Shown: positions 26,992-46,829 of the stretch, piece by piece | How the letters are laid out: every line of letters starts with the position of its first letter | Position numbering within the stretch: position 1 is the first letter of the stretch | Source of the DNA: Lytechinus pictus | Taxonomy: Eukaryota | Direction of reading: 5' to 3' | Length of the DNA stretch: 64,000 nt | Assembly (NCBI RefSeq): GCF_037042905.1 | Contig: NC_087260.1 | Span: 4,898,001-4,962,000 of the forward strand | Program-made: the position numbers and the translations under genes | Notes under the pieces: model-generated | The model's input: only the letters and a program-made list of their open reading frames with translations | Database searches by the model: none | What the model was told of the DNA's origin: nothing

Positions 26992-27252
26992 ATATTAGTA
27001 GTAGTAGTAGTAGTAGTAGATTTAGTAANNNNNNNNNNNNNNNNNNNNNNNNNNNNNNNNNNNNNNNNNNNNNNNNNNNNNNNNNNNNNNNNNNNNNNNN
27101 NNNNNNNNNNNNNNNNNNNNNNNNNNNNNNNNNNNNNNNNNNNNNNNNNNNNNNNNNNNNNNNNNNNNNNNNNNNNNNNNNNNNNNNNNNNNNNNNNNNN
27201 NNNNNNNNNNNNNNNNNNNNNNNNNNNNNTAGTAGTAGTCGTAGTAGTAGTG

Positions 27253-27296
<44 letters not shown>

Positions 27297-27395
27297 TGTT
27301 GTAGTAGTAGTAGTAGTAGTAGAAGTAGTAGTAGCAGCAGCACTACTAGCAGTGGAAGTAGTAGTAGTTGTCACAGTAGTCGTCGTAATAATAGT
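26340..27395. repeat. CT-rich low-complexity tract and (TAG)n microsatellite with N runs
   Basis: Directly visible; source of the poly-S/V/L/T ORFs. Confidence 0.95.
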
Positions 27396-30300
27396 AGATG
27401 TTTTGCGTCGCCGCCAAGTGCCAACGACGATTTCTCACAAGTTCAAGAAGAGTCCCGGATGCGAAATTATTTTTCCCACCGCCGTTTAGGAACAGAATAT
27501 GAATATTCATGACTGATCTCCGTTTCGTAAAAGTAAGTCTTGATGAGTAGATTTACTTTCTCTTTCGTAATTCATAATGTAAATACATGTATATTTTAGC
27601 ACTAAGTTCATATCTACCCTAGATCTCGTGTTGTTAATACGCTTCTTTTCTCTAAATTAACAAGTTTAATTTACTCTTTTAGGCATGTTGAATGGTTATC
27701 TAACAACATCTAAACATTTACTATCAAGACGAATATCTGAAAACCTTGGTCATTGATGAAATGAATTTGCGGTACTAAACACGATCGTTTCAATTAAATC
27801 AAGAGCGCCATCTACAGTCGTAATTAAGAAAGATCATGCGACTGCCGTTACCGAGAACAGAACTTTGCCGTTCATTTCCTCAGTGAATGAATCAAAACTA
27901 TGGAAGCGCACAACATGGCAAACAAAGGTGAAAAAATATATTTAAAAAAAGTCGCTAGAGAGCAAAGGGAGTAAATGAAAATTTGACTTTTCGCAAATTT
28001 AAAATCTAATTTTATGTAATATGTAAACATGATGTATATCCAGAAAATCAGTTTAGATTTTGCCCTTTTCCCACGCATTTTTTCCCTCTTTTTTCTCTCT
28101 ATTGGGCAAGTCTCACTTCCCTTCATAATAGCATGCACTTTGGGCAGCTTTTAGACTATTTTCATTCTTATGCTCGCGGTCACAAGAAACATGAAAATAG
28201 AATGGAATCATTATTTTAGCATGTAATCAGGTTCTGAAAGGACACTGACCATTTTTTTATTAGGGGCGGGAGTTATTTTTTTATTGGAGGGGCAAATCAA
28301 TTTCAGCAGCTCCAATCCCTTATTTTTTTAACATTCAAAGCCATATTGAACACATTTGTTCCTGTTTCAATCTGTATAAAATATAATAGCCATATATGGC
28401 TATATATGGCTATATAGGTATACCGAAAATGGTATTACACCCCCCCCCCCTCCCCGGCCTTTATCTTAATTTCGCTTTGTTGATTTGTATTTACGTATAT
28501 GTATCATGCAATCTTTGCATGTATCATGAGGCATTTTTCATTATTTCGTGCGAACAAATTGAATTTCCATTTGTGCCTGATTGCATTATGGAAAATAGAA
28601 ATATCTGAATCTGAATAAGACACCAAACAGCAATATTGATTTATTACGTGATGCATCAAACATCAAGCAGTGCTTGAACTCTGAAACTTTCAAACATTAC
28701 CTTAAAACATTTCTCTTTAATTCTTCTTAATTTCTTTTATAATTTCCTAAAAAGCGCCTCGAGCACTCTACAGAGTGGATTTGGCGCGATATAAGTCTAA
28801 TTATTATTATTATTATTATTAAATATGATATAGGACTACCTGTACGCTACTGTAAAATCAAGTCGTATTGTCCTATCGTTCCATGTGCATAATGCACGTC
28901 TGGGCAAGGAGCGCGTATTGGGGGACACTCAATATTATGGGGAAATTTATAATAGCTTTTAGATTTTAATTTGTGACGTTTAACGTGAGCAGTTCCCCCA
29001 TATCTCCTCAATTCCAACATTTTCATAGAACTTGATGATTTTTTTTTATAGAAAGAAGTATTAAATCACTTAAGTACCCTGCGCAAAATAACAACGTCCA
29101 TTCATTTCTTTAAATTGTATTTAGGGGAGTTTACATTGCAAAACATAACATGGAGCTACGCACCGGTGACGTCACAAAACCAAAGCCTCAAAAATTCATA
29201 ATTCCGTTTTTCTAACCGATTTTTATATTAAAATTTCGACATACCTTTTTTCTGATATTAATTGAATCAATTTAACGTTTGGGTGGAATTCCACTTTAAT
29301 ACTCCCCCTCCCCCTCTTGAACTGAGAGTGGTCAAATAAGTTTTTTTTCAATTAAAATGCTATTCTTGAGTGTTGGATTTAAGGTGTCAAAAGTCTACAA
29401 ATCCCTAAAAATGAGGTGTTGATAAGTATTTTATTTTTAGAAACGAGGTAAAACAATTATCTGGTATATATTTTGAGACTCTGTTTATTTCCTTATAATT
29501 TAGGATATCCCCCATATTAGTGTCGATTATTGTGCTATCAAAAATATCTTGACACTGGGCATATATTATTTTATTCTTTTGATAATTTCGATAAATGATA
29601 AGAGTCAACGTGAAAATAGGCCTAAAGTGGGGTAAGAGGACCTCGACAAAAATTATGAAATTAAAACTATACGTGTTTATTGAGATTACTTTTTGTAATC
29701 CGATTCTTTTAATTAGGTACTCCTTGGGCCAATCGTACTTTACAATCCCTCTAAAATTACAATATGATTATTTCATAGTAGTAAATCAAATTTCTATTAA
29801 TGGGATTTGATCATCATTTTTGTTCTCATATGGAGTCTGACATTTAAAATTATGGACCTACCTAATTGATGAATCGATTGAAATTACAAAAAGTAGGAAA
29901 TCTTACAGAAATTAATTGTAAGCAAAAAACAAATACATGAATAAATTCACAGCGCCCTGGAAGAGAAAGTTTGAAATATTAAACATATCCACCATTTTCT
30001 AAAATTGTTCCTCTTTACATTTCACGAATTGAGACTTTTGAAAATTAAAAAAAAATGATGAGTGTAAACATTTCCAGGATTTCTGACGTGCATTTTGGGG
30101 ATTTCATGAACAAGGTCTGCACCGAGAAAACTACAAGTAAGCTAAGACCCGCCCTAATTGTTTTAATGCATCCATTACCAGCCGGCACTATTTTAAAAAT
30201 GTATAGACTAATACGTGTTGCTAGATTCCATAAATTACGCCATTTTGAATTCGTCAATATCATTTCATAGTGCAAGGTACCGCTGTCTGTAGGTCTAAAG

Positions 30301-30507
30301 GATAATTAAATAAATATGACTGAAACTAAAGTAAAGGCTTATTGGAAGCGAGGGATATATGACAGATTGGATGGTAGAATAGAAACAACCACCGTACCTC
30401 CCAGTAAGTAGATCTGAAAACCAACTGCTAGCGTTGTCGTTCCTGTTATGTATTATTACATGTACCCTTGGGGGTCTAGAATCTAGACCCTATCCTCGAG
30501 TCTAACT

Positions 30508-31061
30508 CAGGGGCGGCGGAGCGAAGTTGAAAGTATGAAAGTTGAAAGCACAGGGGAAAATTGGCACCTTTTCTTTCGAAAAGGGCACTTTCTTGAAAAA
30601 AAGGTCTACAGCGGTGTAAGAAGCCAAAATTTTTAAGGGGGCAAGAAATGTCGTAGGAAGCTACGAGCGAGCAAAAATTTTGATATTTTAAAATGAAAAC
30701 CCAATTTAAAGATAGATTTTGACATAATATTCAGAAAATAAACTTAAGACACGTTAGATTATTCTGACAATTATTTTCCCTTCATAAGTAGTATGAGAAG
30801 ATTGTTGTCTTGTTTCACACGAAACGGGTCCTTCTCAGATATGAAATGGACACAGAACACGTTCGTGAGGGGCACTTTTCTTGGTTAAATAGGGGAACTG
30901 ATTCAAGAAAGGGCATTTACAAGAAAGCAAGGGGCACTTGCTCACACATAAAACGGGTCCTTCTCAGGTGAAAGGGGCATTTTCCTTGCATGAAAGGGGC
31001 ACTTTTCAGTGCTTCAAATAGTGGGGGTGGGAACTGTGCCCTTCCAGGATCACCGCCCCTG
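30508..31061. mobile_element. Non-autonomous hAT element with AAGGGGCAC repeats
   Basis: CAGGGGCGG / CCGCCCCTG termini; degenerate TSD GTCTAACT/GTTTTACT. Confidence 0.7.
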
Positions 31062-31444
31062 GTTTTACTCTAGTATAATTCATAAAAGGAAAGTCCAGTC
31101 GTGGCCACTGCTTGCACTACAGTGTCACTTTTTCTGAATAACAAAACATACTTTACTTAGGCCTACTTTACTTTTAATCCAACGTTGCTTGTAGGACTAT
31201 GCCTGTTTATCAGTCCAGGGAATAAACTGTATGCTTCACACTGTCAGTTTCAATTAGTTGCATGTGGCAAGATATAAAATCCATTACTCAAAATCATACA
31301 CAAAAGCAATATCCTTTCAGTGATTATCAAGCCAATTCTAAAAGGAATTTACAGAAGGTGCTGAAACCACATTTTTTGGTAGACTGTTCAAAGAACGTAA
31401 AACGCGATTTGAAAAGAAGAACCTCCTTACATCAAGCCTTGCAA

Positions 31445-32068
31445 ATTGCTTTATTTATTTATTTCAAATATCGAAAAGAAGGGTAGCCCAATCAGCAACA
31501 AACACAAATATAAAACATGGTGACATATTCAAATATAAACAAAGCATAAAAAATAATATTGAAAAATGATATAATGAAATAATCATAATAATGGAAATAA
31601 CAAAATAAATAAAATATGATACTGTACAGATGTTACCTAAAAGGAAACAAAAATTCTATATGTACATGAAATGAGATGAAATATGTACAAATTGAGGAGA
31701 AAGAATAGAATAAATTCCACCATTGGACCCTTTAAACATATCAAAGGTTTTTTCCCATTTTGCCATTTCCCGTTTAAACTGTTTAATGTTTTCTATGAAT
31801 CGGAGATGTTCGGGTAATTCATTCCAATGCAATGGGCCTGTGACAAAAGAGATTTCTGGTAAAAGGTTGCACGGGCATATGGCACCCTGATTATCATCTT
31901 ATTTGTGCTCCTTGTTGTTTGAGAGGATACTTTCTCTATATAAATAAACTTATCACAAAGCACCTGAGGAGCAGCTTCGTGTAAACATTTATGAACCATT
32001 AAGCAAGATGCTATAAAAAGACATTTTTGGCCGAGATAATATTTTGAAAATTTAGAGAAATTAGATAC
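31445..32068 (-). mobile_element. LINE (L2/CR1 group) 3' fragment
   Basis: MVHKCLHEAAPQVLCDKF...TRST...VPYARATFYQKS; (TAAA)n tail. Confidence 0.65.
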
Positions 32069-32073
32069 CGTGT

Positions 32074-33603
32074 TGTTGCGGCATGAAATATAATAGGGTC
32101 TGAAACCCAAGCCTATTAATGAACAAAGTTACCTGTATGCAAAGTTATTTTATGTCTATTGGTTAGGATCTCACTTTCCTCTCCTGGTGACAAAATGTTT
32201 CTAAATGTACTAATTCTGGTTGGTCAAGTATACCATGCCCAGTGTATAATCAGGTAGCAACAGTAATCCAATTGGTCAACACATTGGCCAAGCATGCAAA
32301 TTAAACATGACTCAGAGATACCAAGAAATAGGAGATACCACAAAGTTATCCCACTTGGCATCAGAAGACAAAGGAAAGTTCCACAGTCAAGACGTGTTCA
32401 CCATTTTGTTATAAAACTTGAAGAAAATTGCATAGATTTGGAGGTCAAACAATTGGTGAGTTGAAATTATATTATTTGTATAGTTATACATATTTGTACT
32501 GATAATCTCGTACTAGTTAAGGGACTTTCTTCTGTATTTAAACCATAAATATTGTTGCTTGTCATGAAGTTGTGATGACTGCATCTCAGTCGAGTATATA
32601 TACTACTCCGCCTAATGTTATATAATACTTCTTTAAGTTAAGAAGGGATAAATTCTGGTTCTGATTGTAATAATGTATATGAATTAATGCATCTCTCTTA
32701 TGTGTAATTAAGTTAATAGACATTACATTACTCTGATTATTAGTATTTGATATACATGTATTAGTAATTCTAAATGAGGTTTCCTAAGAGGATTGCTAGA
32801 GTGAGAGAGACGGAGAGAGAGAGAGAGAGAAAGAGAAAGTTTGACCATATACGTGCACACACACAAGTGCACCTACTATTAAGTCTTTGTTCTGGAGTGT
32901 ACAGATTTGTCAATGGGCAAAAGTTGTGGCTAGGCTGTCAACTTGACGGTTGTCATGGGTACGAAGTTCTGACCATGACTGGGGTCTGTTTACACAACTG
33001 CTTGTGTTTAGTAGTATCATGATTAAAGTTAGTATCGATTTATCTTTGGTATATGATGAGTTTAAGTTCATATTTTAGTTATTATGTTGTATCATCATTG
33101 TATATATACCTGAGCGATATGTATTAGATTGTTATAGTCTTGTTTATGTTTTACTAGTTATCAAGAAGATATTCTGTTGTCGTTAGTTGTTTGATAATGA
33201 TTGTTAATCATGTATTTATCATATGTTTATCTTCTTTCTTATATTTCAGCAAACCACTCACTCACTCAATACACTCGCTTACTACACTCAGTTCATTTAC
33301 TAGCTTCGTTCACTACACTGTTCACTATTCTGTACAGTTGTTCGTCATTTAATTATTCATCTGTATACTTCATTTACGCTCAACTCCGTCAAGTTATTAA
33401 ACTGTTTACATCTTTCGCTTATGATTTGTAAACTGCTTCGATACCTGGAGAATTGTTGATTGCTGTGATTAAATGAAGCATAACTGTATGGAATTGTGTT
33501 CCTGAACTGTTTATTTCGAGTGCGTTCGGAATATCGACCATCAAATTTATAACTACCATCCTACTTTAAACTCCTGTGGCTTAATTTGTTTACAGAAGTC
33601 ACA
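32074..33603 (+). repeat. Complete 1530-bp LTR, inverted relative to the element body
   Basis: TGTTGCGG...AAGTCACA; reverse complement of 33617-35146 (one mismatch seen, 32152 vs 35068). Confidence 0.95.
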
Positions 33604-33616
33604 TAATGGTCCATTA

Positions 33617-35146
33617 TGTGACTTCTGTAAACAAATTAAGCCACAGGAGTTTAAAGTAGGATGGTAGTTATAAATTTGATGGTCGATATTCCGAACGCAC
33701 TCGAAATAAACAGTTCAGGAACACAATTCCATACAGTTATGCTTCATTTAATCACAGCAATCAACAATTCTCCAGGTATCGAAGCAGTTTACAAATCATA
33801 AGCGAAAGATGTAAACAGTTTAATAACTTGACGGAGTTGAGCGTAAATGAAGTATACAGATGAATAATTAAATGACGAACAACTGTACAGAATAGTGAAC
33901 AGTGTAGTGAACGAAGCTAGTAAATGAACTGAGTGTAGTAAGCGAGTGTATTGAGTGAGTGAGTGGTTTGCTGAAATATAAGAAAGAAGATAAACATATG
34001 ATAAATACATGATTAACAATCATTATCAAACAACTAACGACAACAGAATATCTTCTTGATAACTAGTAAAACATAAACAAGACTATAACAATCTAATACA
34101 TATCGCTCAGGTATATATACAATGATGATACAACATAATAACTAAAATATGAACTTAAACTCATCATATACCAAAGATAAATCGATACTAACTTTAATCA
34201 TGATACTACTAAACACAAGCAGTTGTGTAAACAGACCCCAGTCATGGTCAGAACTTCGTACCCATGACAACCGTCAAGTTGACAGCCTAGCCACAACTTT
34301 TGCCCATTGACAAATCTGTACACTCCAGAACAAAGACTTAATAGTAGGTGCACTTGTGTGTGTGCACGTATATGGTCAAACTTTCTCTTTCTCTCTCTCT
34401 CTCTCTCCGTCTCTCTCACTCTAGCAATCCTCTTAGGAAACCTCATTTAGAATTACTAATACATGTATATCAAATACTAATAATCAGAGTAATGTAATGT
34501 CTATTAACTTAATTACACATAAGAGAGATGCATTAATTCATATACATTATTACAATCAGAACCAGAATTTATCCCTTCTTAACTTAAAGAAGTATTATAT
34601 AACATTAGGCGGAGTAGTATATATACTCGACTGAGATGCAGTCATCACAACTTCATGACAAGCAACAATATTTATGGTTTAAATACAGAAGAAAGTCCCT
34701 TAACTAGTACGAGATTATCAGTACAAATATGTATAACTATACAAATAATATAATTTCAACTCACCAATTGTTTGACCTCCAAATCTATGCAATTTTCTTC
34801 AAGTTTTATAACAAAATGGTGAACACGTCTTGACTGTGGAACTTTCCTTTGTCTTCTGATGCCAAGTGGGATAACTTTGTGGTATCTCCTATTTCTTGGT
34901 ATCTCTGAGTCATGTTTAATTTGCATGCTTGGCCAATGTGTTGACCAATTGGATTACTGTTGCTACCTGATTATACACTGGGCATGGTATACTTGACCAA
35001 CCAGAATTAGTACATTTAGAAACATTTTGTCACCAGGAGAGGAAAGTGAGATCCTAACCAATAGACACAAAATAACTTTGCATACAGGTAACTTTGTTCA
35101 TTAATAGGCTTGGGTTTCAGACCCTATTATATTTCATGCCGCAACA
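33617..35146 (-). repeat. 3' LTR (1530 bp) of the BEL/Pao element
   Basis: Preceded on the - strand by the PPT-like TTGGGGCCGGTA (35147-35158); TGT...ACA termini. Confidence 0.95.
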
Positions 35147-35421
35147 TACCGGCCCCAATGGGCTGACTCACCCATAAGCTCATTCCTACCATTAGAACGC
35201 GGCATATATAAACAATACAAGTATGAACAAAACAAACATAACATTATAACAATAATCAACTAGAATGCATATCCAAATGACTTCAAACAATCAATGACCT
35301 GTAGCTATATCTTTCTACATACATATCTAAATCACAATTAAATATTGGGACCCAGAAAACAAAACTCAGAATAAATAGCATTCACTATTATTTACTACAA
35401 CATTAAATAATTTGCCATTAT

Positions 35422-38400
35422 TTAGGGAGCACCCTTCCCTTCCTCCAAAAGGCAAAGTTTTGAAATTGGACGCCGGAAATATTTTGAACCTATCCTAACC
35501 TCGACCTGCCTTACCCTACCTTGCTTGTCTGGATAAGTGGCCACAATTTTCCCCAAAGGCCACTGCCCACGAGGTGCATTATCGTCCGCCACCAAGACGA
35601 GGTCGTCTTGTTCGAAGTTTCTTTTTTCCCTGGTCCATTTCTGTCTCGGTTGAAGGAGTGGAAGATATTCCTTAACCCATCGCTTCCAAAACTGATCCGC
35701 GATGAATTGGACATGGCGCCATCTCCTTCTGCCATAGCTTTCATCCTTTGTGAAGATGCCGGGTGGCAAGGATGGATTATTCCTCAATAGCAGGAGATGG
35801 TTTGGGGTCAAAGGCTCCTCATCCTTTGGATCCATGCTCAATGGGGTGAGTGGGCGTGCGTTTAGGATAGCCTCTACTTCCGTCATCAGCGTAACTAATG
35901 CCTCATCCGACATAACTTGTTGATGAAGTAGGCCTCCTAGTATTTTGCGCACTGAGCGTATTACACGTTCCCACACTCCTCCCATATGGCTGGCTAGAGG
36001 AGGATTGAAGCGCCACTCAATGCCCTTTTGGGTTAAGAGATTCCCAACCTTAGAGTCATTGAGTGCAGCCAGACTTTCCTTCAATTCTTTATGTCCGCCC
36101 TTAAAGTTTGTTCCATTGTCGCTGAATACCTGATCCGGTTTTCCTCTGCGATTGATGAATCTTCTCAGGGCGCAAATGAAGGAATCTGTGTCAAGAGAAC
36201 AGGCAATCTCTATGTGAACGGCTCTTGACGCAAGACAAGTCAATAGACATGCATATCTCTTCACCTCACTGCGTCCCCTCTTAACCATGAAAGGCCCAAA
36301 GAAGTCCACCCCTGTAGAGGTGAACGGTGGTTTATCTGGTGTCACTCTCTCAGCTGGAAGATCTGCCATGAACTGTTCGCCTCGACGGGAACTTCTCCTT
36401 TTGCACTTCATACACCTTTGAAGTACCTTGCGAACAGTGGCTCCTCCTCTGACTATCCAGAACCTTTCTCTTATGGCTGATAAGGTTATGACCGCTCCTG
36501 AGTGCCCAACCTCTTCATGATAGTGTTGGATAATCAAGTCAGTCACATGATTATCTCTTGGGAGTATAGCAGGGTGTTTTGCATCTTCTGCAAGAGTAGA
36601 TCTTGAAAGTCTACCACCAACTTTCAGTACTCCACCAGTGATGATGGGATTCAGTTTGTCCAGAGGACCTGAGGCCTTTTGCCGCCTTGTTGGTTCCCCT
36701 GATCCAGTCATCACTTCTGAAGGAAATGATCTCAGCTGAACTTGTTTAGTAATTTCAAGTTCAGCCTCTTTCAATTCCTCTGCAGTGAGTCCTCGAGGTA
36801 GCCTTGCTGCTGCATCTCGATTTCTCAAGAACATCTTATACCGAAGTACCCAAGCGAAGGCTCCTTTGAGTCTATTCCAGGATGAATACCTGGTCAACAG
36901 TTCTTGCACACTGTCATTTGTTACGACAGTGTTCACATGAACTCTGTCTTTCTTTACTTCCAGGTCATCCTTCTTCAGTTCTCCCAAGATGGCTGGAGAA
37001 GATGGCCAGTTTTCTTCCTCTTGTTTGAGGAAGTCGGGTCCTGAGAGCCATCTTGGATTCGTGATAAGATCCTGAGCCTTCAAACCTCGCGATCCATCAT
37101 CAGCTGGATTGAGTTTAGTGTTCACATGTCGCCACTGGCTCAGTTCTGTTACCTCACGAATCTTAGCAACTCTATTTGCTACAAAGGTATGGAACCTTCG
37201 GCTCTCATTTTGGATGTACATGAGAACAGAAGTTGAATCTGTCCAGTACGTTGTGGTAGCAATCGGTAACCTTAATTCCTCTTGAATCATGTGATTCATG
37301 TCAACAGCTAGTACAGCTGCTGCCAATTCAAGCCTTGGTATTGAGGTGACCTTCAAGGGACTGAGTCTAGACTTACCACAAACAAATGAGCAATGTATGC
37401 GACCAGCAGAATCCTCTAAGCGTAGGTAAGCCACAGCTGCATACCCAAGCTCTGATGCATCGCAGAAATAGTGGAGCTGGTAAAGTACTTGATCTTCAAG
37501 TATTTCTGGTTTGAGACATCTTGGTATCTTTATCTCTGTCAGTCTGGGAAGATCATCAAGCCATTCTTGCCAGGTCTGGAGATCCTTTTCATCCACTGGT
37601 TCATCCCATGCTAGACCTTTCTGGCAGATGCCTTGCAGAAGAACCTTGGCTACCAAGATGAAAGGTGCTAGGAACCCAAGGGGGTCGTATAAAGAGCTTA
37701 CCTTAGACAGTATCCCTCGCCTGGTTGCAGGTCTGTCCTTCAGACTCACCTTAAAGCCGAACCTGTCGGAATCGACATCCCACAACACTCCTAGCGTTCT
37801 CTCGATTGGGAGAGTATCCAGATCCATATCAATTACAGATGGAGCCTTTTCTGTGTCAGGTATTGAGTTAAGCACTTCTCTACTATTACTTACCCATTTT
37901 GTTAAGCGGAATCCTCCTTTCTGCAGAAGACCTCTCAGTTGCTGGACTAGCCTCACCCCATCTTTGTCAGAGGGTACTGATTTGAGGCAGTCATCGACAT
38001 AGAAGTTGTCCAGCACTGTGTTGACGACGTCTTCGTCATATTCATGTCGGTTATCTTCTGCAGTTCTTCTAAGAGCAAATCCTGCGCAGCTCGGTGATGA
38101 CGTTGCACCAAAAAGATGCACCTTCATTCGATACTCTACCGGTTCTGTGGCCAGGTTACCATTTTCCCACCATAGGAAGCGGAGAGCATCGCAATCTTTC
38201 TTCGGCACCTTTACCTGATGAAACATTGCCTCTACGTCACCAACAACTGCCACAGGTTCCTCCCTGAATCGCAGGAGTACACCAACTAAGCTATTGGTGT
38301 GGTCGGGTCCTTGCAGCAATGTGTCATTTAGTGAAGTTCCACGATACTTTGCTGCACAGTCGAACACAACTCTTACCTTGTCAGGTTTGTGAGGATGAAC

Positions 38401-41250
38401 GACCGGATGATGAGGGAGATACCATATACAGGAAGTCTGAAGATTTGCTTCCTTCTTCTGTCTTGGTACCTTCTCCGCATATCCCTTCTCTATATAACCT
38501 TGGACAGTCTCCGTGTACTTGACGGCTAGATTAGAATCCTTCTTAAGCCTCCTTTCCAAGTACTTGAGACGGACTTCAGCCATATGGCGATTGTTCTCAA
38601 GTCCGGGGTCTGGATACTTCCAGGGTAGCCCTACCTCGTAGTGGCCATCGACGAGCTTGATACTTTCCCGCATGAGTTCTCTCGCTCGCATGTCTTGGAT
38701 GGACTCTCCCATCCTCCCTGGATTATCCTCAACCACATGGTCCAACTCCCAGAACTTCTTGACCTGGTCTTGAAGTCTTTCATCTTCTAGCCGGGCAAAG
38801 TTCACATGGAAGGCTGTAGTTTCCTTAGACTTTGTGGTTGGCCCCATTAGCGTCCAACCTAGAGGGCAGCGTATCGCATAAGGTTCCTTCCTTTTCCCTC
38901 TCCTCTGTTCCAGGACCCAAAACGCTTCAGGGGTGTCGGCTCCTATGAGAAGCTTGACCTCCCTTGCGTCGATCGATGGGAACTCAATACCTCTTAAGTG
39001 TCTCCACTTAAGAAGGTCCTTGTTGTCTGGAATCAGAGAATCGGAAAGCGGTAAGGACTTCACTGTCCAGACACGTGGAATATCCAACTCTTCCTTGTAA
39101 TGGATATCCCTGACCTTGAGGCTGACCTCTTCACCTTGCTGGGAATCAACCCCATTGACAGTTGTGAGTTGAATTCGCCGTGGTGACCCTGTCATCCCAA
39201 GGTCTCTTACCAAATCCTTGGAGCAGATTGATATATCGCTCCCTTCATCTAGTAAGGCCCATGTCTGTACTTCACGTCCATTACCTTGGACCTTCACTGG
39301 CAAGACCCTTAGACTTACCTTTCCTTGTGAAGTTACACTGCTGTAACAGTCGCCCGCTTCTCTGCTAGAGGCTTCTTCATCTGAACTACCGGCCCCGGTG
39401 TCTGAGTTGGATTCTTGGGAATTGCTAGACTTCTTGGGGTTAGCTTTGTCAAGTTTTCTTTCCTTGAAGAAGGATGCAGGAGCATGAAGAAGGGTGTGAT
39501 GCTTCCGTTGGCATCCCTTCTCAGTACATCTAGATTTCATCATGCATCCGGACGACATATGCGAAGGTCGGAAGCAGTTATCACACAACTTGTGCTTCCT
39601 GGTAATGTTCCTCCTCTCTTCGAAGGATTTCTTGACAAAGTTCCTACAGTCCTCTAGGTTATGCCGCCCAGAGCAGCAAAGACAACTTCTATCGCTCTTT
39701 GCTTTGGACTTACCTTTACCAGCTGCGGGGTTGCTCTGAGTTGACATTGTTGTTACCTTGAACCCTCCTTTTGGCTTTGAGGATTTGTCAGATGGTTTGT
39801 TTTTCGATTTGCCAATGTTTTGGCCAAACAAATTACTTGATAACTGGGCAGACTCCTCAATGAACATAGTCATGGCTTCAAACGTTGGAGCCATGAACCT
39901 GGTCATCATTGAGTGCGCCCTCCTTGCCCACTCGGACTGCAAGTGGACTGGCAAGAACTGTTGGATGCGCAGAAGGTTTTCTGTGCTATCCATGTCGGCT
40001 CGATAATTTCCTTGCGACAAAACCATCTGACATTTCCTCATGCCGCGAGCAAGGTCCCATAGTGCTTCACCGTCATTTGGTCTGATGGGCTGACGACTTA
40101 GCACCTTTTTCATGTGAGCAGTGGCAACCATGTATGGCTGCCCAAATTGATTTTCTAGAATATCCCTTGCCTTTTGGTATCCGGTCTGGGGCCCTAGGAA
40201 GACACAATTTTCAATGCTATCCTTAGCCTTACTACTACAGTATTGTATTAAATACGTTAGCTTAGCCCTATCATCACTTATCTTAGAAGCTACAGTGGCG
40301 TCAAAGCTGGAAATGAAGGCACAATAATCTAATGGGTTACCATCGAATACTTTCATTTCCGGCTTTGGCATGTTCATCACTAAGTCCAAAGCGTTAAACA
40401 TTTTAGTCATGTTAGACATGGCTGCACCATCCCCCTTGACACTTTCTACCTTTACCCCTATCCCAGTGTATTCTGGGGCATTTGGATTCAAATTTGTTAC
40501 CATGGGGACATGTGCAGCTTCATCAAGAGAATATCTATTATCCCTTGTTTTGACATCATTAAAAGTAGAGTCATTAACATGTATCTTATTTGACTTATCT
40601 ACTCTTACTTGACTTTCATCGTCCGATTCTTCCTCAAGACACTGAAGCTCAACTTCAGCGGCTGCGATGTCCTTGTCGGCTTCCATCGCCGCAAGCTTCT
40701 GTTCAAGCTTCAATTGTTCTTGTTTAAGTTCATGGGCCTTTGCCATGTGCTGTCTATTGAGGCGTGCAACAGCCGCCTTGGCTCTTGCTTCTCTCAGTCG
40801 TGCTGACGATGTCGAGCTCGCTACGGTGAACCGCGATGCCTTGCTACTCGACGATCGGGAAGACCGCACTGACCGCCTGTCGTCATCGACGTCGCCGTCA
40901 ACGTCGGCTGGCCGACCTCCCACGTCAACTCTTTTCTCCGCTGCTTCCATCCAATCTTGTAGTCTGACTCGGAACTCTCGATTGTTCTCGACATTTCTCT
41001 CGAATTTCTCTGACGCAGCCTCCGCTTCTGCTCCACTCAACTCGCTTATGTATTCATCGCTTTTTTCCTTGTACGAGGTGAATACCCTTTCGAGCTGGAG
41101 ATGCTTTTGCACGACTGCGTCCTTATTTTCGAAGTCTGCCATTAAAACCTCTAGTTCCTTGTAGAGTCGGGATAATGTCCCTATGTATCCCCTACATGAA
41201 TGCTTCAGCGAAGTGACGTTATCATCATTTGAAAAATCTGAATCTGCCAT
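35422..41250 (-). CDS. BEL/Pao gag-pol polyprotein, 1942 aa, uninterrupted
   Basis: Gag FDGNPLDY and three Cys/His knuckles; protease LLDEGS; RT YLPHH, RVVFDC, FYVDD; RNase H HYFCDAS, NPADDGSRG; integrase HHCC, GVDFFGP, SDNGTNF, GGVWER; order PR-RT-RH-IN. Confidence 0.97.
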   Translation of the reverse strand: MADSDFSNDDNVTSLKHSCRGYIGTLSRLYKELEVLMADFENKDAVVQKHLQLERVFTSYKEKSDEYISELSGAEAEAASEKFERNVENNREFRVRLQDWMEAAEKRVDVGGRPADVDGDVDDDRRSVRSSRSSSSKASRFTVASSTSSARLREARAKAAVARLNRQHMAKAHELKQEQLKLEQKLAAMEADKDIAAAEVELQCLEEESDDESQVRVDKSNKIHVNDSTFNDVKTRDNRYSLDEAAHVPMVTNLNPNAPEYTGIGVKVESVKGDGAAMSNMTKMFNALDLVMNMPKPEMKVFDGNPLDYCAFISSFDATVASKISDDRAKLTYLIQYCSSKAKDSIENCVFLGPQTGYQKARDILENQFGQPYMVATAHMKKVLSRQPIRPNDGEALWDLARGMRKCQMVLSQGNYRADMDSTENLLRIQQFLPVHLQSEWARRAHSMMTRFMAPTFEAMTMFIEESAQLSSNLFGQNIGKSKNKPSDKSSKPKGGFKVTTMSTQSNPAAGKGKSKAKSDRSCLCCSGRHNLEDCRNFVKKSFEERRNITRKHKLCDNCFRPSHMSSGCMMKSRCTEKGCQRKHHTLLHAPASFFKERKLDKANPKKSSNSQESNSDTGAGSSDEEASSREAGDCYSSVTSQGKVSLRVLPVKVQGNGREVQTWALLDEGSDISICSKDLVRDLGMTGSPRRIQLTTVNGVDSQQGEEVSLKVRDIHYKEELDIPRVWTVKSLPLSDSLIPDNKDLLKWRHLRGIEFPSIDAREVKLLIGADTPEAFWVLEQRRGKRKEPYAIRCPLGWTLMGPTTKSKETTAFHVNFARLEDERLQDQVKKFWELDHVVEDNPGRMGESIQDMRARELMRESIKLVDGHYEVGLPWKYPDPGLENNRHMAEVRLKYLERRLKKDSNLAVKYTETVQGYIEKGYAEKVPRQKKEANLQTSCIWYLPHHPVVHPHKPDKVRVVFDCAAKYRGTSLNDTLLQGPDHTNSLVGVLLRFREEPVAVVGDVEAMFHQVKVPKKDCDALRFLWWENGNLATEPVEYRMKVHLFGATSSPSCAGFALRRTAEDNRHEYDEDVVNTVLDNFYVDDCLKSVPSDKDGVRLVQQLRGLLQKGGFRLTKWVSNSREVLNSIPDTEKAPSVIDMDLDTLPIERTLGVLWDVDSDRFGFKVSLKDRPATRRGILSKVSSLYDPLGFLAPFILVAKVLLQGICQKGLAWDEPVDEKDLQTWQEWLDDLPRLTEIKIPRCLKPEILEDQVLYQLHYFCDASELGYAAVAYLRLEDSAGRIHCSFVCGKSRLSPLKVTSIPRLELAAAVLAVDMNHMIQEELRLPIATTTYWTDSTSVLMYIQNESRRFHTFVANRVAKIREVTELSQWRHVNTKLNPADDGSRGLKAQDLITNPRWLSGPDFLKQEEENWPSSPAILGELKKDDLEVKKDRVHVNTVVTNDSVQELLTRYSSWNRLKGAFAWVLRYKMFLRNRDAAARLPRGLTAEELKEAELEITKQVQLRSFPSEVMTGSGEPTRRQKASGPLDKLNPIITGGVLKVGGRLSRSTLAEDAKHPAILPRDNHVTDLIIQHYHEEVGHSGAVITLSAIRERFWIVRGGATVRKVLQRCMKCKRRSSRRGEQFMADLPAERVTPDKPPFTSTGVDFFGPFMVKRGRSEVKRYACLLTCLASRAVHIEIACSLDTDSFICALRRFINRRGKPDQVFSDNGTNFKGGHKELKESLAALNDSKVGNLLTQKGIEWRFNPPLASHMGGVWERVIRSVRKILGGLLHQQVMSDEALVTLMTEVEAILNARPLTPLSMDPKDEEPLTPNHLLLLRNNPSLPPGIFTKDESYGRRRWRHVQFIADQFWKRWVKEYLPLLQPRQKWTREKRNFEQDDLVLVADDNAPRGQWPLGKIVATYPDKQGRVRQVEVRIGSKYFRRPISKLCLLEEGKGAP

Positions 41251-41280
41251 CCTTATTATTGTCTGGAAATTGCAAACTTA

Positions 41281-41986
41281 TGTGACTTCTGTAAACAAAT
41301 TAAGCCACAGGAGTTTAAAGTAGGATGGTAGTTATAAATTTGATGGTCGATATTCCGAACGCACTCGAAATAAACAGTTCAGGAACACAATTCCATACAG
41401 TTATGCTTCATTTAATCACAGCAATCAACAATTCTCCAGGTATCGAAGCAGTTTACAAATCATAAGCGAAAGATGTAAACAGTTTAATAACTTGACGGAG
41501 TTGAGCGTAAATGAAGTATACAGATGAATAATTAAATGACGAACAACTGTACAGAATAGTGAACAGTGTAGTGAACGAAGCTAGTAAATGAACTGAGTGT
41601 AGTAAGCGAGTGTATTGAGTGAGTGAGTGGTTTGCTGAAATATAAGAAAGAAGATAAACATATGATAAATACATGATTAACAATCATTATCAAACAACTA
41701 ACGACAACAGAATATCTTCTTGATAACTAGTAAAACATAAACAAGACTATAACAATCTAATACATATCGCTCAGGTATATATACAATGATGATACAACAT
41801 AATAACTAAAATATGAACTTAAACTCATCATATACCAAAGATAAATCGATACTAACTTTAATCATGATACTACTAAACACAAGCAGTTGTGTAAACAGAC
41901 CCCAGTCATGGTCAGAACTTCGTACCCATGACAACCGTCAAGTTGACAGCCTAGCCACAACTTTTGCCCATTGACAAATCTGTACA
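41281..41986 (-). repeat. 5' LTR truncated to its downstream 706 bp
   Basis: Matches 33617-34322 wherever compared; the upstream 824 bp of the LTR are missing. Confidence 0.93.
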
Positions 41987-41991
41987 CGTGT

Positions 41992-43620
41992 AATGCTGCC
42001 CTCTTATGTTCCTGGGAATGACCTCTAGTCCTTCCGTCCTTACTGCGTACAAGCAGATGCTAGAGTTATGGATACCATGCATTATCTTATAAACCTCTAT
42101 CATGTCTCCTCTTCTACGTCTGTGAAGAAGAGATGGTAGTTTCAAGTGATGCTGTAGCTTTGGATAGGACAAGTTCCTCAGTCGTGGGATTAGCTCTTCG
42201 TTTCACACTCTCTAGCCGTTTCTGATCACATATTCTAAAAGGTGACCAAACTGAATGGCCATATTCTAATAACGGTCTTATTGGACCCTTAAACTTAAGT
42301 TTCACTGTATCTTCATCCAAATTTACAAAAGACCTCCTTATTAAACTTAGCAATTTATTTTATTTAGAGACAGCTTGTGAGATGATGTCTTTGAAGGTAA
42401 GCGTGCGTCAACTAGTACTCCCAAGTCCCTCACTACCTGACTTTAAGAAATAGAGAATCATCTTCTTTACCCGTGTGGTATTCAAATGCAGACTGCACAC
42501 GAGCAACTTTCAGAATAGTACACTTGTCTGGGTGGAAGCAAAGTTGTCATTCTCAGCCCAGCTTTCTAACAGTGACATGCCATTTTGAAGTTGCTGACAA
42601 GACCCAGATAAATTTGAGCAGGCATAAAACTTTGTATCATCCGCAAAAGGCGTTGAATTTGGAAGATTTGATCATTAATGTTATGCCAAGAACAGACAGG
42701 GATCGAGCACAGTACCCTGAGGAATACCACGCTAGTCTTCGTACCAGTTTGACTCCTGACCTTTGACCATGTTGACATAAACACGTTGCCTTCGCCCAAA
42801 AAGGAAGGCCTTAATCCAAACATGGACATGTCCTCGAATACCATATGCCTCTAGCTTTGTCAGTACGATGTAGCACAGTGTCAAAAGACTTCATGGAATC
42901 CATGTAGATGGCATCAATTGTGCCGCCATCATCTAATACTCGAGTCCATTCATCAATGACTTCCAACAAATGTGTGGTACATGACTTACCCACAACAAAT
43001 CTATGTTGATGAGGAGAAAGAAGTGCATTTCTATAGAAATATTCCATGAAAACTGTCCTTATCAAAGATTCAAGTACCTTATAGACAATACATGTCAAGC
43101 TAACTGGCCGATAATTCTTACTCTGAATTTTATTCCCCTTCTTAACATTTGCAGGTCTGCAATCTACTGGTAATTTACCTCTCTATATAAGCTTGTCTGG
43201 AATATAACAGCCAGTGGAACTGAAAGCACGTGAGCCAACTCATTAGGTAAACGAGGGTGTAAATTATCAGGGCCAGGAGACTTGCTTGGGTTGAACTTTT
43301 GTAGGAGCTCCGAAACATCACTCGATGTGATTTCCATGTTTTTAAAGCAGAATCATAGACCACAGGTTGAAGAACAGATATGAATTCCACATCTCCCTAG
43401 ATGAACACAGAAAAAAAATCTGTAAAACTTCTGCCTTCTCTTTATCTGAAGTTGTCATGTTACCATCTGGTTTGACTAGAGTTGACAAAGTTTGCATGGT
43501 GGATATATTACACATTATATCCAGAAAGGTTTAGAGTCGCGTTTGACTCTTGGAGCAATGCTCATTTCAAAGTCTTTAACTGCATTCCTACAAGCCGATT
43601 TGCTTGATTACGAGCCTACA
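41992..43620 (-). mobile_element. Degenerate CR1-clade LINE (RT region)
   Basis: LTCIVYKVLESLIR, QHRFVVGKSCTTHLL, DAIYMDSMKSFD, GIPQG, FADD, RPLLEYGHSVWSP, RRRRGDMIEVYKI; many frameshifts. Confidence 0.88.
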
Positions 43621-45699
43621 ATATTCTAAACGGTCTAATTCACGTAAAATATCTATAATAAAACAAATGAAAAATCGAGGATGTAAGAGAGAAAAAGCTA
43701 ACTAAATATATTTTGGTCATTCCTATACACTTTGGACAAAATTATTTTTTGAATTGAACTGAATATAACTAACAGATAAATTTGAAGGAATCAAAGTACT
43801 GTTACCAGCAGATGTATTCCTTCTAAATTTCGAGAAGCACTATATACAAAGTGTGTTTAGTGCACCATAATACTAAGATTTATTATTGAAATTTTCAAAT
43901 TATGCCTACATTACTTGATCGCTACGTTCCGACTCGCATACAAGTGACTGGACAATTCTCCTGGAGGCATACAATATAACCAATTCACAGCTATACCCAG
44001 TGGTATAGGTTGGACCATACACTCCCTTGCATGAGGAGATCAACATTTCAGCCGCCCCTGTCTCAATTCTATGCCATATTCTCACTCTACCGAGTGAGTA
44101 AAAAATTACACCTCACAGACCCCAATTTAAGGGGGAAAAATATGTAATGGATGCCTAATTATCATATATGACCTGAAAGAGAATGTTATCCCAAATAATT
44201 TGATACCATATTTATGTGGTATCAGGTATGTGTTAATGTTAGGATAATCAGATGATCAGGGGGTATTCTTTGCAGTGATGCGAATTTCAATTTGCGCCAA
44301 AGTATAAAGGCATGACTACAATGAATTAACCCAGATGTCAATGATGTCACAATCCTACAAGGGTTCCATTTCAAAACACTTTTTAAAACGTAATTTATAT
44401 TAGACAGGACCAATATGGGGAGAATTTGAGTTCAAGGAGCATTTTGGGGTAAAAGTTGGGAACCGGTCTATTTCACCTAATTTGAATGTGCTGAATCTGA
44501 TAAGACCGGTTCGCAAGCCAATTTTTCATGTTTTGACCACCTAATTTGCATAAACAAAATGGCTGCCAAATTGACAATTTATAATCTTATTTCTACAGTA
44601 TTCTTTTAAAATATTCGCTTTCACCGATATGGATACTGCAAAATCCTGCATACTAAACATGTACCATTTGGGAAAATTTGTTATTTCTTTTTGCGGCTCA
44701 TTAATTATGCAAATTTATGCATATTTTGCAATATAATGCTATAATTTGAAAATTACACCCCTAAAATGTTTATTATTTTGAGTACAAATAGCATTTGTAT
44801 CATTATAATAATTGTTTAGCCCTTAAATATAATATTCAAGTCAATTTTTATACGTATTTTATTGTTCTTTGATATTTCTTTTGTGTTCTTGTATTTTCTG
44901 CCATTTGCTTTGTATATGTTTGATATGAGATCTTAAAAAAAATAATATCAATGGCAGACAAATATTGAGCTTCAATGATTGAATCATTTGATAAACTTCT
45001 TTTGCCACAACTGTTAATTGTACTCAGGAACAAATACACACACATGCTCCCACACCCACACCTGTATATAGAAAGTAATATACTTGCAAGGTATAGTAGA
45101 CATGCCCAATATAAAAACATTGATGCTGATCCTATAATCATGACACTTACCAAATTCAATGAACCCGTAAGAAAAGAGTTTAGAAGTTGGAAAACCTGTA
45201 GTCATGCTGAACTTAAATTTCTTGAAATAGATATGTTAAAATGTTTCATAACAGATCAAATAATCAATTAAACGTATGATTTACGCAGTGTAGTTTATCA
45301 ATCGGATATAAGTATCAGTACATTGTTATTATCCTTGCAGCAAAATTATATTTTTGATTCAGCTCCATCAGAACTGCAATCATGGCAGTTAACCAAAAAA
45401 CAATTTGTAATAAATGCAAAGGGTCTGTATTACTGGATCACTTACTAGTTTTTTGGTCATTACCGATTTATTTATTTATGTGGCAACGATACATTTTCCC
45501 CAAGTCAACCATCAAAGTGAAAACTGAAAACCACAGCTTTTATCCAATCCTTACCTTGGAAGATTCTTTGACGAACGATACTGAATACAGAAGAGGAAAT
45601 GATAAAAAAATGGGGCTAAACACAGATTAGCTCCATGGTTAAAACATGGGCGAGGAAGGTTTCCAGCCCAGTCACTACCCAATGCAGAACAAATTTTCA

Positions 45700-46490
45700 C
45701 ATTGTGACCTATGGTTAAAAAGTGCTAGAGATGCCTGTTGAAGGTAAACCATCATGGAGACAGTTGCAGAAGTCCAGTCTAGAGGTTATCCGGTCATGGA
45801 TGATATTTTCTGCACCACCTAGTGTAAGAAATGTCTGATCTCAGCAATTATGTGGAGCAGCTAATATGCAGATTGGCAGACATGTGATGTGTGTTTCTTC
45901 ATGCTCATTGTTCTATCAAAGACTACGCCAAGAGATCTAGCCTTGCATACTGCAGATATATAGCTTCCTCACCTATTAAGACTGGAGTTGTAGTCATAAT
46001 AATTACGCATATATGGAGATGACAGAACGAGATACCGGTACCTCGCTTTTTATCGTTAAGCTCCAGGAAGTTGACCTTCATCCAACATCGAATCCTCAAT
46101 GGCAGCACCAACAACAGCAGCTGCACGAACCTCTGTATATTTACCTTTTGGATCAAAAGTGAGGTATACAGCTGGATGTCACCAGCATAGAAGTGTATAC
46201 CAACACCATGTAGCCACATTACAGAGCCAAGAGGAGTGATGTACAGTTTGAAGAACAAGGGACAAGGACAGACTCCCAAGGAACTCCATATCAAAGGGTA
46301 GTTACAGGAGACTGCATGCCAGTGATGAATACAGCTTCATTCAGCTCTGTTGGCAAGGTAAGAGAAACCTGCCATTAGAGTGCAGAATCATCAATTCCAA
46401 AACAGACTGTCAGTCTCCCAAGAAGAATGGCATGTTTACTGGTATCAAAACCGGTTGACAAGTCAAACATAACTTAGGCAACTGCTTTCC
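45700..46490 (-). mobile_element. Degenerate L2 LINE RT fragment
   Basis: LYITPLGSVM...HFYAGDIQLY (YADDTQLY-like), WMKVNFLELND. Confidence 0.75.
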
Positions 46491-46829
46491 TCATAGAAAG
46501 AGAAATCCTGGCTCTACAATCGAAGAAATTCTCGACCTAGTCTTTGATGGTGATATATCAGACTTGCATGCAGCCTATCAGAGCTGGGTAAGCTATTAGA
46601 TGCTGTTGGGTTTAATACCGATCAAAATAAGTGGATTAATAATCACCCACAGGAACGCCAAACATTCCAGGAACCCACCATCCTCTGAAAGATATCTTCG
46701 TTATCAATTAGAAATAGTCTATCTTATGAAGATATGAAGATGTGTGAATATTAGAAGTTCGATAAATGGCCTAGAAGACATTACACAATTCACTGCGGTA
46801 TTGAAAATATGCACTCCGAGCATTTTAAC

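What the first reader, a model, noticed from the sequence alone, without database searches (positions are those of the whole stretch)
32069..41991. BEL/Pao insertion shaped like an unfolded hairpin reverse-transcription intermediate, integrated as one unit
Seen on the + strand: CGTGT | full LTR sense (32074-33603) | TAATGGTCCATTA | full LTR antisense (33617-35146) | PPT | intact gag-pol antisense | last 706 bp of the LTR antisense ending ...TGTACA | CGTGT. The 3073-bp palindrome centres on 33610 and stops exactly at the LTR/PPT boundary. Established: plus-strand strong-stop DNA starts at the PPT and copies the LTR plus a few primer bases from the minus strand; BEL/Pao integrases join CA-3' ends and typically give ~5-bp TSDs. 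Inference: joining the strong-stop 3' end to the minus-strand 5' end, with failed second strand transfer and run-off at the RNA 5' end, yields this linear order. The shared 5-bp repeat suggests integrase inserted it whole. This would be an unusual route to large genomic palindromes. The intact ORF and near-identical LTRs imply a very recent event.
Basis: partly seen in the sequence, partly recalled or inferred. Interest (0 to 1): 0.9.

Follow-up and report, generated by a model that had tools for sequence, protein, structure and literature searches.

The report
Retrotransposon insertion with folded-back LTR
A young sea-urchin BEL/Pao retrotransposon copy was inserted in one event carrying an extra, mirror-image copy of its terminal repeat, which looks like a preserved accident of reverse transcription and makes a 3-kb near-perfect palindrome in the genome.

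Summary
Window 32074-35146 is a 3073-bp palindrome: 1536-nt arms, one mismatch, axis at 33610. Each arm is one full 1530-bp LTR plus 6 nt. It is followed by an intact antisense gag-pol (1942 aa) and the last 706 bp of an LTR. CGTGT flanks the whole unit.

The window is Lytechinus pictus. Four canonical copies of the same family have two full LTRs, and the three intact L. pictus ones have 5-bp target duplications. So the LTR limits, the truncation point (LTR position 825) and the duplication length are independently anchored.

The best reading is one integrase-mediated insertion of an aberrant cDNA whose U5 end carries an inverted LTR (about 0.8 for this umbrella claim). A fold-back assembly artefact cannot produce the flank/U3 junction with a matching duplication.

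The central TGG/CCA is not encoded by the family, which has no TGG-type primer site. Position 825 shows no sign of being the RNA 5' end; conserved promoter-like motifs lie about 460 nt upstream. It does copy the GG-NN-TGT context of the natural plus-strand start.

I favour a reverse-transcriptase-only route: a second plus-strand start, strand displacement, then a template jump onto the displaced strand. No read-level or empty-site check was possible.

The parts
32069..32073 (.). Left copy of the 5-bp target-site duplication, CGTGT
   Evidence: Identical to 41987-41991. Canonical family copies also have 5-bp duplications.
32074..33603 (+). Extra outer LTR, full length (1530 bp, TGTTGC...GTCACA), inverted relative to the element. 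Its U3 terminus is joined to host DNA.
   Evidence: It is 97-98% identical over its full length to the LTRs of canonical copies L001, L002 and L004. It carries the one derived base (A at 32152, LTR position 79).
33604..33616 (.). Central 13 nt, TAATGG-T-CCATTA; the palindrome axis is at 33610
   Evidence: TAA equals the first 3 nt that follow the 5' LTR in all copies. TGG/CCA is not found at that place in any copy. AGTCACATAATGG occurs nowhere else in the loci held.
33617..35146 (-). 3' LTR of the element, full length; inner arm of the palindrome
   Evidence: It has the ancestral G at LTR position 79.
35147..35159 (-). Plus-strand primer region (reads ATTGGGGCCGGTA on the - strand), abutting U3
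   Evidence: The same motif sits in the same place in L001, L002, L004, L005, L006 and L007.
35422..41250 (-). Intact gag-pol ORF, 1942 aa
   Evidence: Peptidase_A17 7.8e-49, DUF5641, Integrase_H2C2, rve, RVT_1.. 99% identical to P0125. Collinear with canonical copies over 8370 nt.
41251..41280 (-). 30-nt leader between the 5' LTR and the ATG (TAAGTTTGCAATTTCC...), where a primer-binding site would be expected
   Evidence: The motif TAAGTTYGCAATTG is conserved in a second family.
41281..41986 (-). Truncated 5' LTR: LTR positions 825-1530 only. Its outer end, TGTACA..., is joined to host DNA.
   Evidence: In the full LTR it is preceded by CTGGAG, one of only two GG-NN-TGT sites among the 56 TGT in the LTR.
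41987..41991 (.). Right copy of the 5-bp target-site duplication, CGTGT

Best explanation
A real, single, integrase-mediated insertion of an aberrant reverse-transcription product of an active Lytechinus BEL/Pao family.

Proposed route (all inferred):
1. On the minus-strand DNA of the 3' LTR, plus-strand synthesis starts twice. One start is at the authentic primer (ATTGGGGCCGG-TA|TGT), giving strand 'a' (LTR 1-1530). The other is at a look-alike site inside the LTR (CTGG-AG|TGT), giving strand 'b' (LTR 825-1530 plus the primer copy).
2. Strand 'a' displaces 'b' and runs to the 5' end of the minus strand, ending ...ACA-TAA-TGG. TGG would copy a CCA left from the primer.
3. The freed strand 'b' makes the second strand transfer. 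The minus strand is therefore completed only back to LTR 825, which gives the truncated 5' LTR.
4. Strand 'b' is extended across the whole element and displaces 'a' from the right LTR. At the template end it adds one non-templated base and jumps onto the 3' end of the just-displaced 'a'. Copying 'a' back to its 5' end, the U3 terminus, creates the inverted LTR.
5. Both ends of the resulting duplex are plus-strand-start-type ends that finish in ...ACA-3'. Integrase joins them to the target with the usual 5-bp stagger, and host repair seals the centre.

Shown: the structure; the family's LTR limits; the 5-bp duplications; the exact arm ends; the foreign TGG/CCA at the axis; the GG-NN-TGT context at 825.
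Inferred: every enzymatic step.

The umbrella claim (a real, one-event insertion of a pre-formed fold-back cDNA) I put at about 0.8. This specific route I put at about 0.4.
For: - Structure and duplication.
- Canonical copies with two full LTRs (L001, L002, L004, L005); the three intact L. pictus ones have 5-bp duplications. All are collinear with the window copy apart from the two anomalies.
- The outer arm stops exactly at U3 nt 1, which is the 5' end that a PPT-primed plus strand has.
- The axis lies 6.5 nt beyond the U5 CA, where the minus-strand primer junction is, and holds 3+3 nt not encoded by the element.
- The truncation point is TGT preceded by CTGGAG. The natural junctions read CCGGTA|TGT and CCGGAA|TGT. 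GG..TGT occurs twice, and GG[AT][AG]TGT once, among 56 TGT sites in the LTR.
- The single arm difference is a derived base on the outer arm. The inner arm and 6 of the 7 full-length LTRs from other copies keep G. That fits an RT error in strand 'a' fixed by its being copied.
- One anomaly, the second start, explains both the short 5' LTR and the existence of a displaced acceptor strand.
- Precedent for integrase pairing one authentic end with an internal end, with a target repeat: HTLV-1 proviruses lacking the 5' LTR (PMC6950816).
- Precedent for inverted LTR sequence appended to a lentiviral insertion (PMC13769313).
Against: - There is only one example. No other copy with this form was found in the 5 other family loci held.
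- No read-level or empty-allele evidence is available.
- The PPT-like context at 825 is short and was noticed after the fact. Conditional on a TGT end, it is about 2 in 56.
- The family shows no TGG-type primer-binding site, so a CCA primer remnant is itself unexplained.
- A template jump onto a displaced strand is known to me for other polymerases and for retroviral RT in vitro. That is from memory and was not found in the library searches.
- The sequence cannot distinguish this route from a ligated hairpin.
Confidence: 0.4

Rival explanations
1. The 3' end of plus-strand strong-stop DNA is covalently joined to the 5' end of the minus strand, giving a closed hairpin at the U5/primer end. The second strand transfer fails. 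The minus strand runs off at the 5' end of a second RNA. The 9.9-kb strand is made double-stranded through the hairpin and integrated.
For: It gives exactly the observed order. It explains why the arm starts at U3 nt 1 and why the axis sits at the primer junction. The single duplication fits. The arm mismatch could be an RT error kept in a hairpin stem.
Against: - It needs a ligase or transesterification with no known source in a virus-like particle.
- It also needs three further independent failures and a primer at the extreme 3' end of the minus strand.
- LTR 825 has no conserved promoter context. TATTAA lies only 21 nt upstream, while the motifs conserved between families (CCAAT-like, ATGCAAAT, TATAAA at 337, a conserved block and GT donor at 365-389) lie about 460 nt upstream. 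So 825 is probably inside the transcript, not at its start.
Confidence: 0.17
2. Host end-joining before integration. Two cDNA ends, each ending ...ACATAATGG, were ligated tail to tail. One came from a 5'-truncated element and the other from an LTR-length duplex. Integrase then used the two outer ends.
For: Ligating two identical ends automatically gives a palindrome. End-joining of unintegrated retroviral DNA (2-LTR circles) is established knowledge. The duplication shows that integrase acted afterwards.
Against: - It needs a free, LTR-only duplex with an intact U3 end.
- The odd centre, a single unpaired base, needs an extra nucleotide.
- The truncated 5' LTR remains a separate, unexplained accident.
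Confidence: 0.1
3. Assembly or sequencing artefact, such as a fold-back chimeric read or a graph mis-join through LTR repeats. The true allele would be simpler.
For: Near-perfect kilobase palindromes are a classic signature of fold-back reads. The locus is present in only one assembly in the collections searched. I could not see reads or learn the sequencing chemistry.
Against: - A fold-back read would continue the mirror image past the LTR into the PPT and pol. It would not end at U3 nt 1 against unique host DNA carrying the matching 5-bp repeat.
- The axis sits at a biologically meaningful base, and the arms differ at one position.
- No simple canonical insertion in either orientation predicts both observed host junctions.
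Confidence: 0.08
4. Several genomic events: two independent insertions (an element and a solo or partial LTR) or a later inversion or duplication of an ordinary copy.
For: Nested and rearranged LTR elements are common. This window is rich in transposable elements.
Against: - The 13 nt between the two LTR ends are themselves palindromic.
- The bases after the 3' LTR (TAATG) do not repeat the ACACG at the other end of that element. The only matching 5-mers flank the whole unit.
- Inverting a canonical copy in either orientation does not give this order.
- The internal region is collinear with canonical copies.
- All three LTR pieces are practically identical.
Confidence: 0.04

Closest known systems
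Canonical copies of the same Lytechinus BEL/Pao family (L001, L002 and L004 in L. pictus; L005 in L. variegatus)
   Same: The LTR is 97-98% identical in L. pictus and about 93% in L. variegatus. They share the TGT...ACA ends, the ATTGGGGCCGGTA plus-strand primer region, the leader and a 1942-aa gag-pol. Duplications are 5 bp.
   Different: They have two full direct LTRs. None has an inverted third LTR or a 5' LTR cut at position 825.
HTLV-1 'type 2' defective proviruses lacking the 5' LTR (Miyazaki et al. 2007, as summarised in PMC6950816)
   Same: A defective genome formed before integration. Integrase pairs the authentic end of one LTR with an internal sequence, and the normal short target repeat flanks the product.
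   Different: There is no inverted LTR and no palindrome. It is a vertebrate retrovirus with a 6-bp repeat.
Snap-back or turn-around synthesis and end-to-end template jumping by reverse transcriptases, and inverted chimeras made when a strand-displacing polymerase switches to the displaced strand (from my own knowledge, not from a tool)
   Same: A polymerase at the end of its template goes on copying a strand of the same polarity as its own product. This gives an inverted repeat with zero to a few extra bases at the turn.
   Different: Those are in vitro or amplification artefacts, or short self-primed strong-stop products. Here the product is 1.5 kb per arm, is bounded by natural replication landmarks, and has been integrated into a germline genome.
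L1 'twin priming' inversions (non-LTR retrotransposons; from my own knowledge)
   Same: A replication accident during reverse transcription gives an insertion with an inverted segment flanked by one target-site duplication.
   Different: It is target-primed, with no LTRs or integrase. The inverted part is not a duplicate, so no palindrome results.
Lentiviral vector insertion with extra sequence and 24 bp of inverted 3' LTR at its 3' end (PMC13769313)
   Same: A long-read-resolved insertion in which inverted LTR sequence is appended beyond the 3' LTR.
   Different: Only 24 bp are inverted. It is joined through a duplicated internal segment and is not a full-LTR palindrome.

Membership tests
BEL/Pao (Belpaoviridae) LTR retrotransposon | Polyprotein with Pao-type aspartic peptidase (Peptidase_A17), RT, and DDE integrase with DUF5641 tail | tested here: met
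   Peptidase_A17 7.8e-49, DUF5641 5.2e-31, Integrase_H2C2 2.6e-10; rve and RVT_1 are below the curated cut-offs; the best relatives are all urchin Pao-type polyproteins.
BEL/Pao (Belpaoviridae) LTR retrotransposon | Direct LTRs with TG...CA ends and a short target-site duplication | tested here: met
   Canonical copies L001, L002 and L004 have TGT...ACA LTRs of 1507-1542 bp with 5-bp duplications. The window copy departs from this: it has an inverted extra LTR and a truncated 5' LTR.
BEL/Pao (Belpaoviridae) LTR retrotransposon | [quoted passage not shown] | tested here: inconclusive
   The leader is TAAGTT[T/C]GCAATTG..., with no TGG start, in three related families. No tRNA genes were present in the sequence held. 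No self-priming complement was found.
   The axis at 33610 is 6.5 nt beyond the U5 CA. The arms end at 32074 and 35146, which is U3 nt 1 as defined by canonical copies.
   TGG/CCA is not element-encoded and equals a CCA-3' end. However, the family has no site that would pair with CCA.
   There are no transcript data. Promoter-like motifs conserved between families lie at LTR 139-389, and only a TATTAA sits at -21 from position 825. The motif evidence leans against this feature.
   The sequence is equally well produced by a template jump or by end-joining.
Integrase-mediated single insertion | Both ends finish in CA-3' and are flanked by one family-typical target duplication | tested here: met
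   The ends are ...GCAACA-3' and ...TCTGTACA-3'. CGTGT lies on both sides. The family norm is 5 bp.
Fold-back read or assembly artefact | The mirror image continues through any landmark to the end of the read, with no independent host junction for the second arm | tested here: not met
   The outer arm ends at U3 nt 1 against unique host DNA carrying the matching 5-mer. Read support itself could not be tested.
Autointegration (intramolecular integration) product | An internal segment is inverted or deleted at a target site inside the element, with a 5-bp repeat of element sequence | tested here: not met
   The partial LTR, internal region and 3' LTR are collinear with canonical copies over 8370 nt. 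The only rearrangement junction is the palindrome centre.
DIRS-like elements (naturally inverted terminal repeats) | Tyrosine recombinase instead of DDE integrase | tested here: not met
   Integrase zinc-binding and rve domains are present. No tyrosine recombinase hit was found.

The most novel reading that the evidence does not exclude
The locus is a natural, base-resolved record of a normally invisible replication intermediate of a Belpaoviridae element. If so, it shows three things. First, fold-back (hairpin or turn-around) cDNAs are made in vivo and remain substrates for integrase through a U3 end paired with a U3-like cryptic end. Second, this is a recurrent, previously unrecognised way in which LTR retroelements seed kilobase-scale perfect palindromes in animal germlines, with consequences for fragility and for hairpin-RNA-based silencing of the family. 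Third, the family's minus strand is primed by a CCA-ended RNA even though no complementary primer site is present.
Probability: 0.2. Interest if true: 0.8.

Novelty: new variant of a known kind. Interest (0 to 1): 0.58.

Why it matters
Replication of BEL/Pao elements has not been studied directly; the ICTV profile (PMC8742986) calls it poorly understood.

If the locus is real, one insertion fixes several otherwise unobservable points:
- where the plus strand starts;
- where the minus strand's 5' end lies, and that it carried CCA;
- that integrase accepts a U3 end paired with a cryptic ACA end.

It would also be a documented route from reverse transcription to a 3-kb near-perfect palindrome. 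Palindromes of this kind are expected to be unstable. Read-through from the 3' LTR would be transcribed into a 1.5-kb LTR hairpin RNA, a possible trigger for small-RNA silencing of the family.

The limits are that it is a single locus in one assembly, so it may be no more than a one-off accident.

Tried and rejected
1. Empty site through the sister species. I recovered the neighbouring CHST15-like gene product (P0127). I then found its L. variegatus ortholog (P0217) and fetched that locus (L009). It is collinear with window 24626-29274 at 84-88% identity but ends about 2.8 kb short of the insertion site.

2. A second route through the 144-aa host gene that spans the insertion found nothing usable.

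3. An independent L. pictus assembly. The element protein and the neighbouring gene are on record for one assembly only. The flanks have no paralogue in the sequence held.

4. Identifying the primer. There are no tRNA genes in the window or loci. No Tf1-like complement of the leader occurs in the LTR. No Rfam family matches 31000-43000. Comparisons with tRNA-Gly/Arg recalled from memory were suggestive at best, and I do not rely on them.

5. Transcription start. No transcript data were reachable, only motif positions.

6. Literature. Five searches found no description of an LTR fold-back palindrome insertion. That is not proof of absence, because the library is open-access only.

7. Rejected on the evidence: autointegration, a DIRS-like nature, two independent insertions, and inversion of a canonical copy (see Membership tests and the rival explanations).
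Full report
**1. What is there**

- On the + strand, CGTGT lies at 32069-32073.
- A full LTR in sense follows at 32074-33603 (TGTTGC...GTCACA).
- The 13 nt TAATGGTCCATTA are at 33604-33616.
- The same LTR in antisense is at 33617-35146.
- On the - strand, the G-rich ATTGGGGCCGGTA abuts U3.
- An uninterrupted 1942-aa ORF lies on the - strand at 35422-41250.
- A 30-nt leader follows, then the last 706 bp of the LTR in antisense (41281-41986), ending ...TCTGTACA, and CGTGT again at 41987-41991.

A base-by-base check gives 1535 of 1536 complementary positions between the arms. The single mismatch is 32152 (A) against 35068. There is no mismatch between the partial LTR and the arms. Complementarity stops exactly at 32074 and 35146.

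The ORF has Pao peptidase, RT, integrase and DUF5641 domains.

**2. Where it comes from, and the family**

The polyprotein is on record once, in Lytechinus pictus GCA_037042905.1, chromosome CM073241.1. Its 90% cluster led to three other L. pictus copies (L001, L002, L004) and one L. variegatus copy (L005).

All four are ordinary: LTR - internal - LTR. They are collinear with the window copy over its 8370 nt. LTRs are 1507-1555 bp. They start TGTTGCGG directly after ...GGGGCCGGTA and end ...GTCACA.

The three L. pictus copies have 5-bp duplications: ACTAT, GGTAT and GCCAA. L002 has identical LTRs (0 of 1542), so the family has been active very recently. A second BEL family about 55% identical (L006) also has identical LTRs and a 5-bp duplication.

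The LTR limits, the 5-bp rule and the 'missing' 824 bp of the 5' LTR are therefore anchored independently of the palindrome.

**3. Real or artefact**

I could not see reads, and no second assembly holds the locus. The argument is structural.

A fold-back read mirrors everything up to its turning point. The second arm would then continue into the PPT and pol. Instead it stops at U3 nt 1 and meets unique host DNA carrying the same 5-mer that follows the other end.

Neither orientation of an ordinary insertion predicts both host junctions. Two separate insertions would not leave a 6+6-nt palindromic spacer. They would also carry their own duplications, but the bases after the 3' LTR (TAATG) do not match the ACACG at the other end of that element. 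Autointegration would rearrange the interior, which is collinear.

I put a real, single, integrase-mediated insertion of a pre-formed aberrant cDNA at about 0.8, and an artefact at under 0.1.

**4. The centre**

In all five family copies and in L006, the 5' LTR is followed by TAAGTT[T/C]GCAATTG. L007 has the related AGTTAGCAACTCG. Of the six bases beyond U5 in each arm, only TAA is element-encoded. The TGG (CCA on the other strand) is foreign.

Both arms carry it, so the strand that served as template already had it. The simplest source is a CCA-3' primer end left on the minus strand.

None of the three families has a TGG-type primer-binding site. No tRNA gene was available for comparison, and no Tf1-like self-primer was found. 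The ICTV profile states that tRNA-Arg or tRNA-Gly primes this virus family. I record the primer as unexplained.

**5. The truncated end**

I found no support for that.
- The only TATA-like motif nearby is TATTAA at -21.
- The blocks conserved between this family and L006/L007 lie at LTR 139-389. They are a CCAAT-like motif, ATGCAAAT, TATAAA at 337, then GGAGGTCAAACAATTG|GTGAGTT, which looks like a short first exon with a splice donor.
- This is motif evidence only, but it places position 825 inside the transcript.

Position 825 does mimic the natural plus-strand start. The natural junction reads CCGG-TA|TGT (CCGG-AA|TGT in L006), and the truncation point reads CTGG-AG|TGT. GG..TGT occurs at only 2 of the 56 TGT sites in the LTR.

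**6. Mechanism**

I favour a route that needs only known reverse-transcriptase activities and one initial error.
- A second plus-strand start at 825 yields a short strong-stop DNA.
- The PPT-primed strand displaces this short strand, which then makes the second transfer. Hence the 706-bp 5' LTR.
- When its extension later displaces the PPT-primed strand from the right LTR and reaches the template end, it adds one base and jumps onto the 3' end of that displaced strand.
- It copies that strand back to U3 nt 1. Hence an inverted LTR of exactly this extent, with a single odd base at the axis.
- Both duplex ends are plus-strand-start-type ends finishing in ACA-3', and integrase joins them with a 5-bp stagger.

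The derived base sits on the outer arm. The inner arm and 6 of the 7 full-length LTRs from other copies keep G. That fits an RT error in the displaced strand that was then copied, though a later mutation is equally possible.

Transcription-start mapping and end mapping of particle cDNA would separate them.

**7. What is known**

- Integrase pairing one authentic end with an internal sequence, leaving the normal target repeat, is described for HTLV-1 proviruses lacking the 5' LTR (PMC6950816).
- Inverted LTR sequence appended to a lentiviral vector insertion has been seen with long reads (PMC13769313).
- Snap-back synthesis, non-templated addition and template jumping by reverse transcriptases are established knowledge. 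I cite these from memory.
- I found no description of a full-LTR fold-back palindrome integrated as one unit. The search covers open-access papers only.

I class the finding as a new variant of a known kind: an aberrant or defective LTR-retroelement insertion.

- In one search, a window-versus-L003 comparison printed 20 letters of L003 at the window's N run (26704-26723). I did not use them or look at any masked stretch again.
- In one search, a script variable joined a full LTR to the rest of the element in memory. It was never used, printed or saved.

**9. Verdict**

A one-event integration of a fold-back reverse-transcription product is supported. The ligation, the run-off at the RNA 5' end and the primer bases are not shown, and the motif evidence leans against the run-off.
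- Interest is 0.58. It is a striking and informative single locus whose weight depends on read-level confirmation and on whether it recurs.

Noticed in passing
window 32212-32462 (LTR positions 139-389); L006 2597-2836; L007 about 2420-2490: Blocks conserved between three urchin BEL families about 55% identical. They are AATTCTGGTTGGTCA, a CCAAT-like motif plus ATGCAAAT (octamer-like), TATAAA (LTR 337, this family only), then GGAGGTCAAACAATTG|GTGAGTT. The last looks like a transcription start followed after about 15-20 nt by a 5' splice donor. An acceptor-like TTTCAG|CAAACC lies at LTR 1171. Together they suggest an intron of about 790 nt inside the LTR.
   Followed up: partly
window 41251-41280 (-); L001/L002 9971-10000; L004 8623-8652; L006 3887-3902; L007 3898-4000: The sequence after the 5' LTR is TAAGTT[T/C]GCAATTG in two families and AGTTAGCAACTCG (repeated) in a third. 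None has a TGG-type tRNA primer-binding site. The LTR block hexamer is CAATTG in two families and CAGTTG in L007, whose leader carries the complement CAACTG. This could mean pairing between the 5' block and the leader, but it rests on a single covariation.
   Followed up: partly
window 32798-32836 and 34384-34422: A (GA)n tract of about 39 nt lies in the LTR about 60 nt upstream of the truncation point, followed by the inverted repeat GTGCAC-N8-GTGCAC. Neither coincides with position 825.
   Followed up: no
window 30316-50229 (+): The insertion lies, in antisense, in the single intron of a predicted 144-aa gene. Exon 1 is 30316-30405. Exon 2 is 49885-50229 and consists of 27-nt G/K/R-rich tandem repeats. 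The gene model looks weak.
   Followed up: partly
window about 1-25534 (+); L009: A CHST15-like carbohydrate sulfotransferase gene (378 aa, P0127) ends at 25534. The L. variegatus ortholog region is collinear to window 29274 at 84-88% identity, with an extra 3.3 kb in L. variegatus.
   Followed up: partly
window 18653-21661 (-), flanked by inverted repeats 17616-17846 / 24064-24294: Three adjoining ORFs of a non-LTR retrotransposon (endonuclease plus reverse transcriptase, 631+215+172 aa) lie inside an intron of the sulfotransferase gene. Diverged inverted and direct repeats lie around them.
   Followed up: no
window 799-1310, 12770-13683, 21867-22055, 62504-62998: Eleven dispersed copies of an approximately 80-nt unit with the core TTTCAGCTCGCGCTTCGCGCTCGCAT, probably a short interspersed or miniature element.
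   Followed up: no
window 4997-5197 and 59539-59848: Arrays of 16-nt (TTCCGAAGGTTCGTAA-like) and 42-nt units that also form inverted repeats with each other, at two places 54 kb apart.
   Followed up: no
window 1429-2659 (+): Two ORFs (141 and 150 aa) that look like remnants of a hAT-type transposase, judged by eye only.
   Followed up: no
window 4154-4290, 26704-26890, 27029-27229, 55212-55429: Four N runs. The loci fetched from the public assembly (L003, L008) carry letters there. Apart from the slip, these were not read.
   Followed up: no
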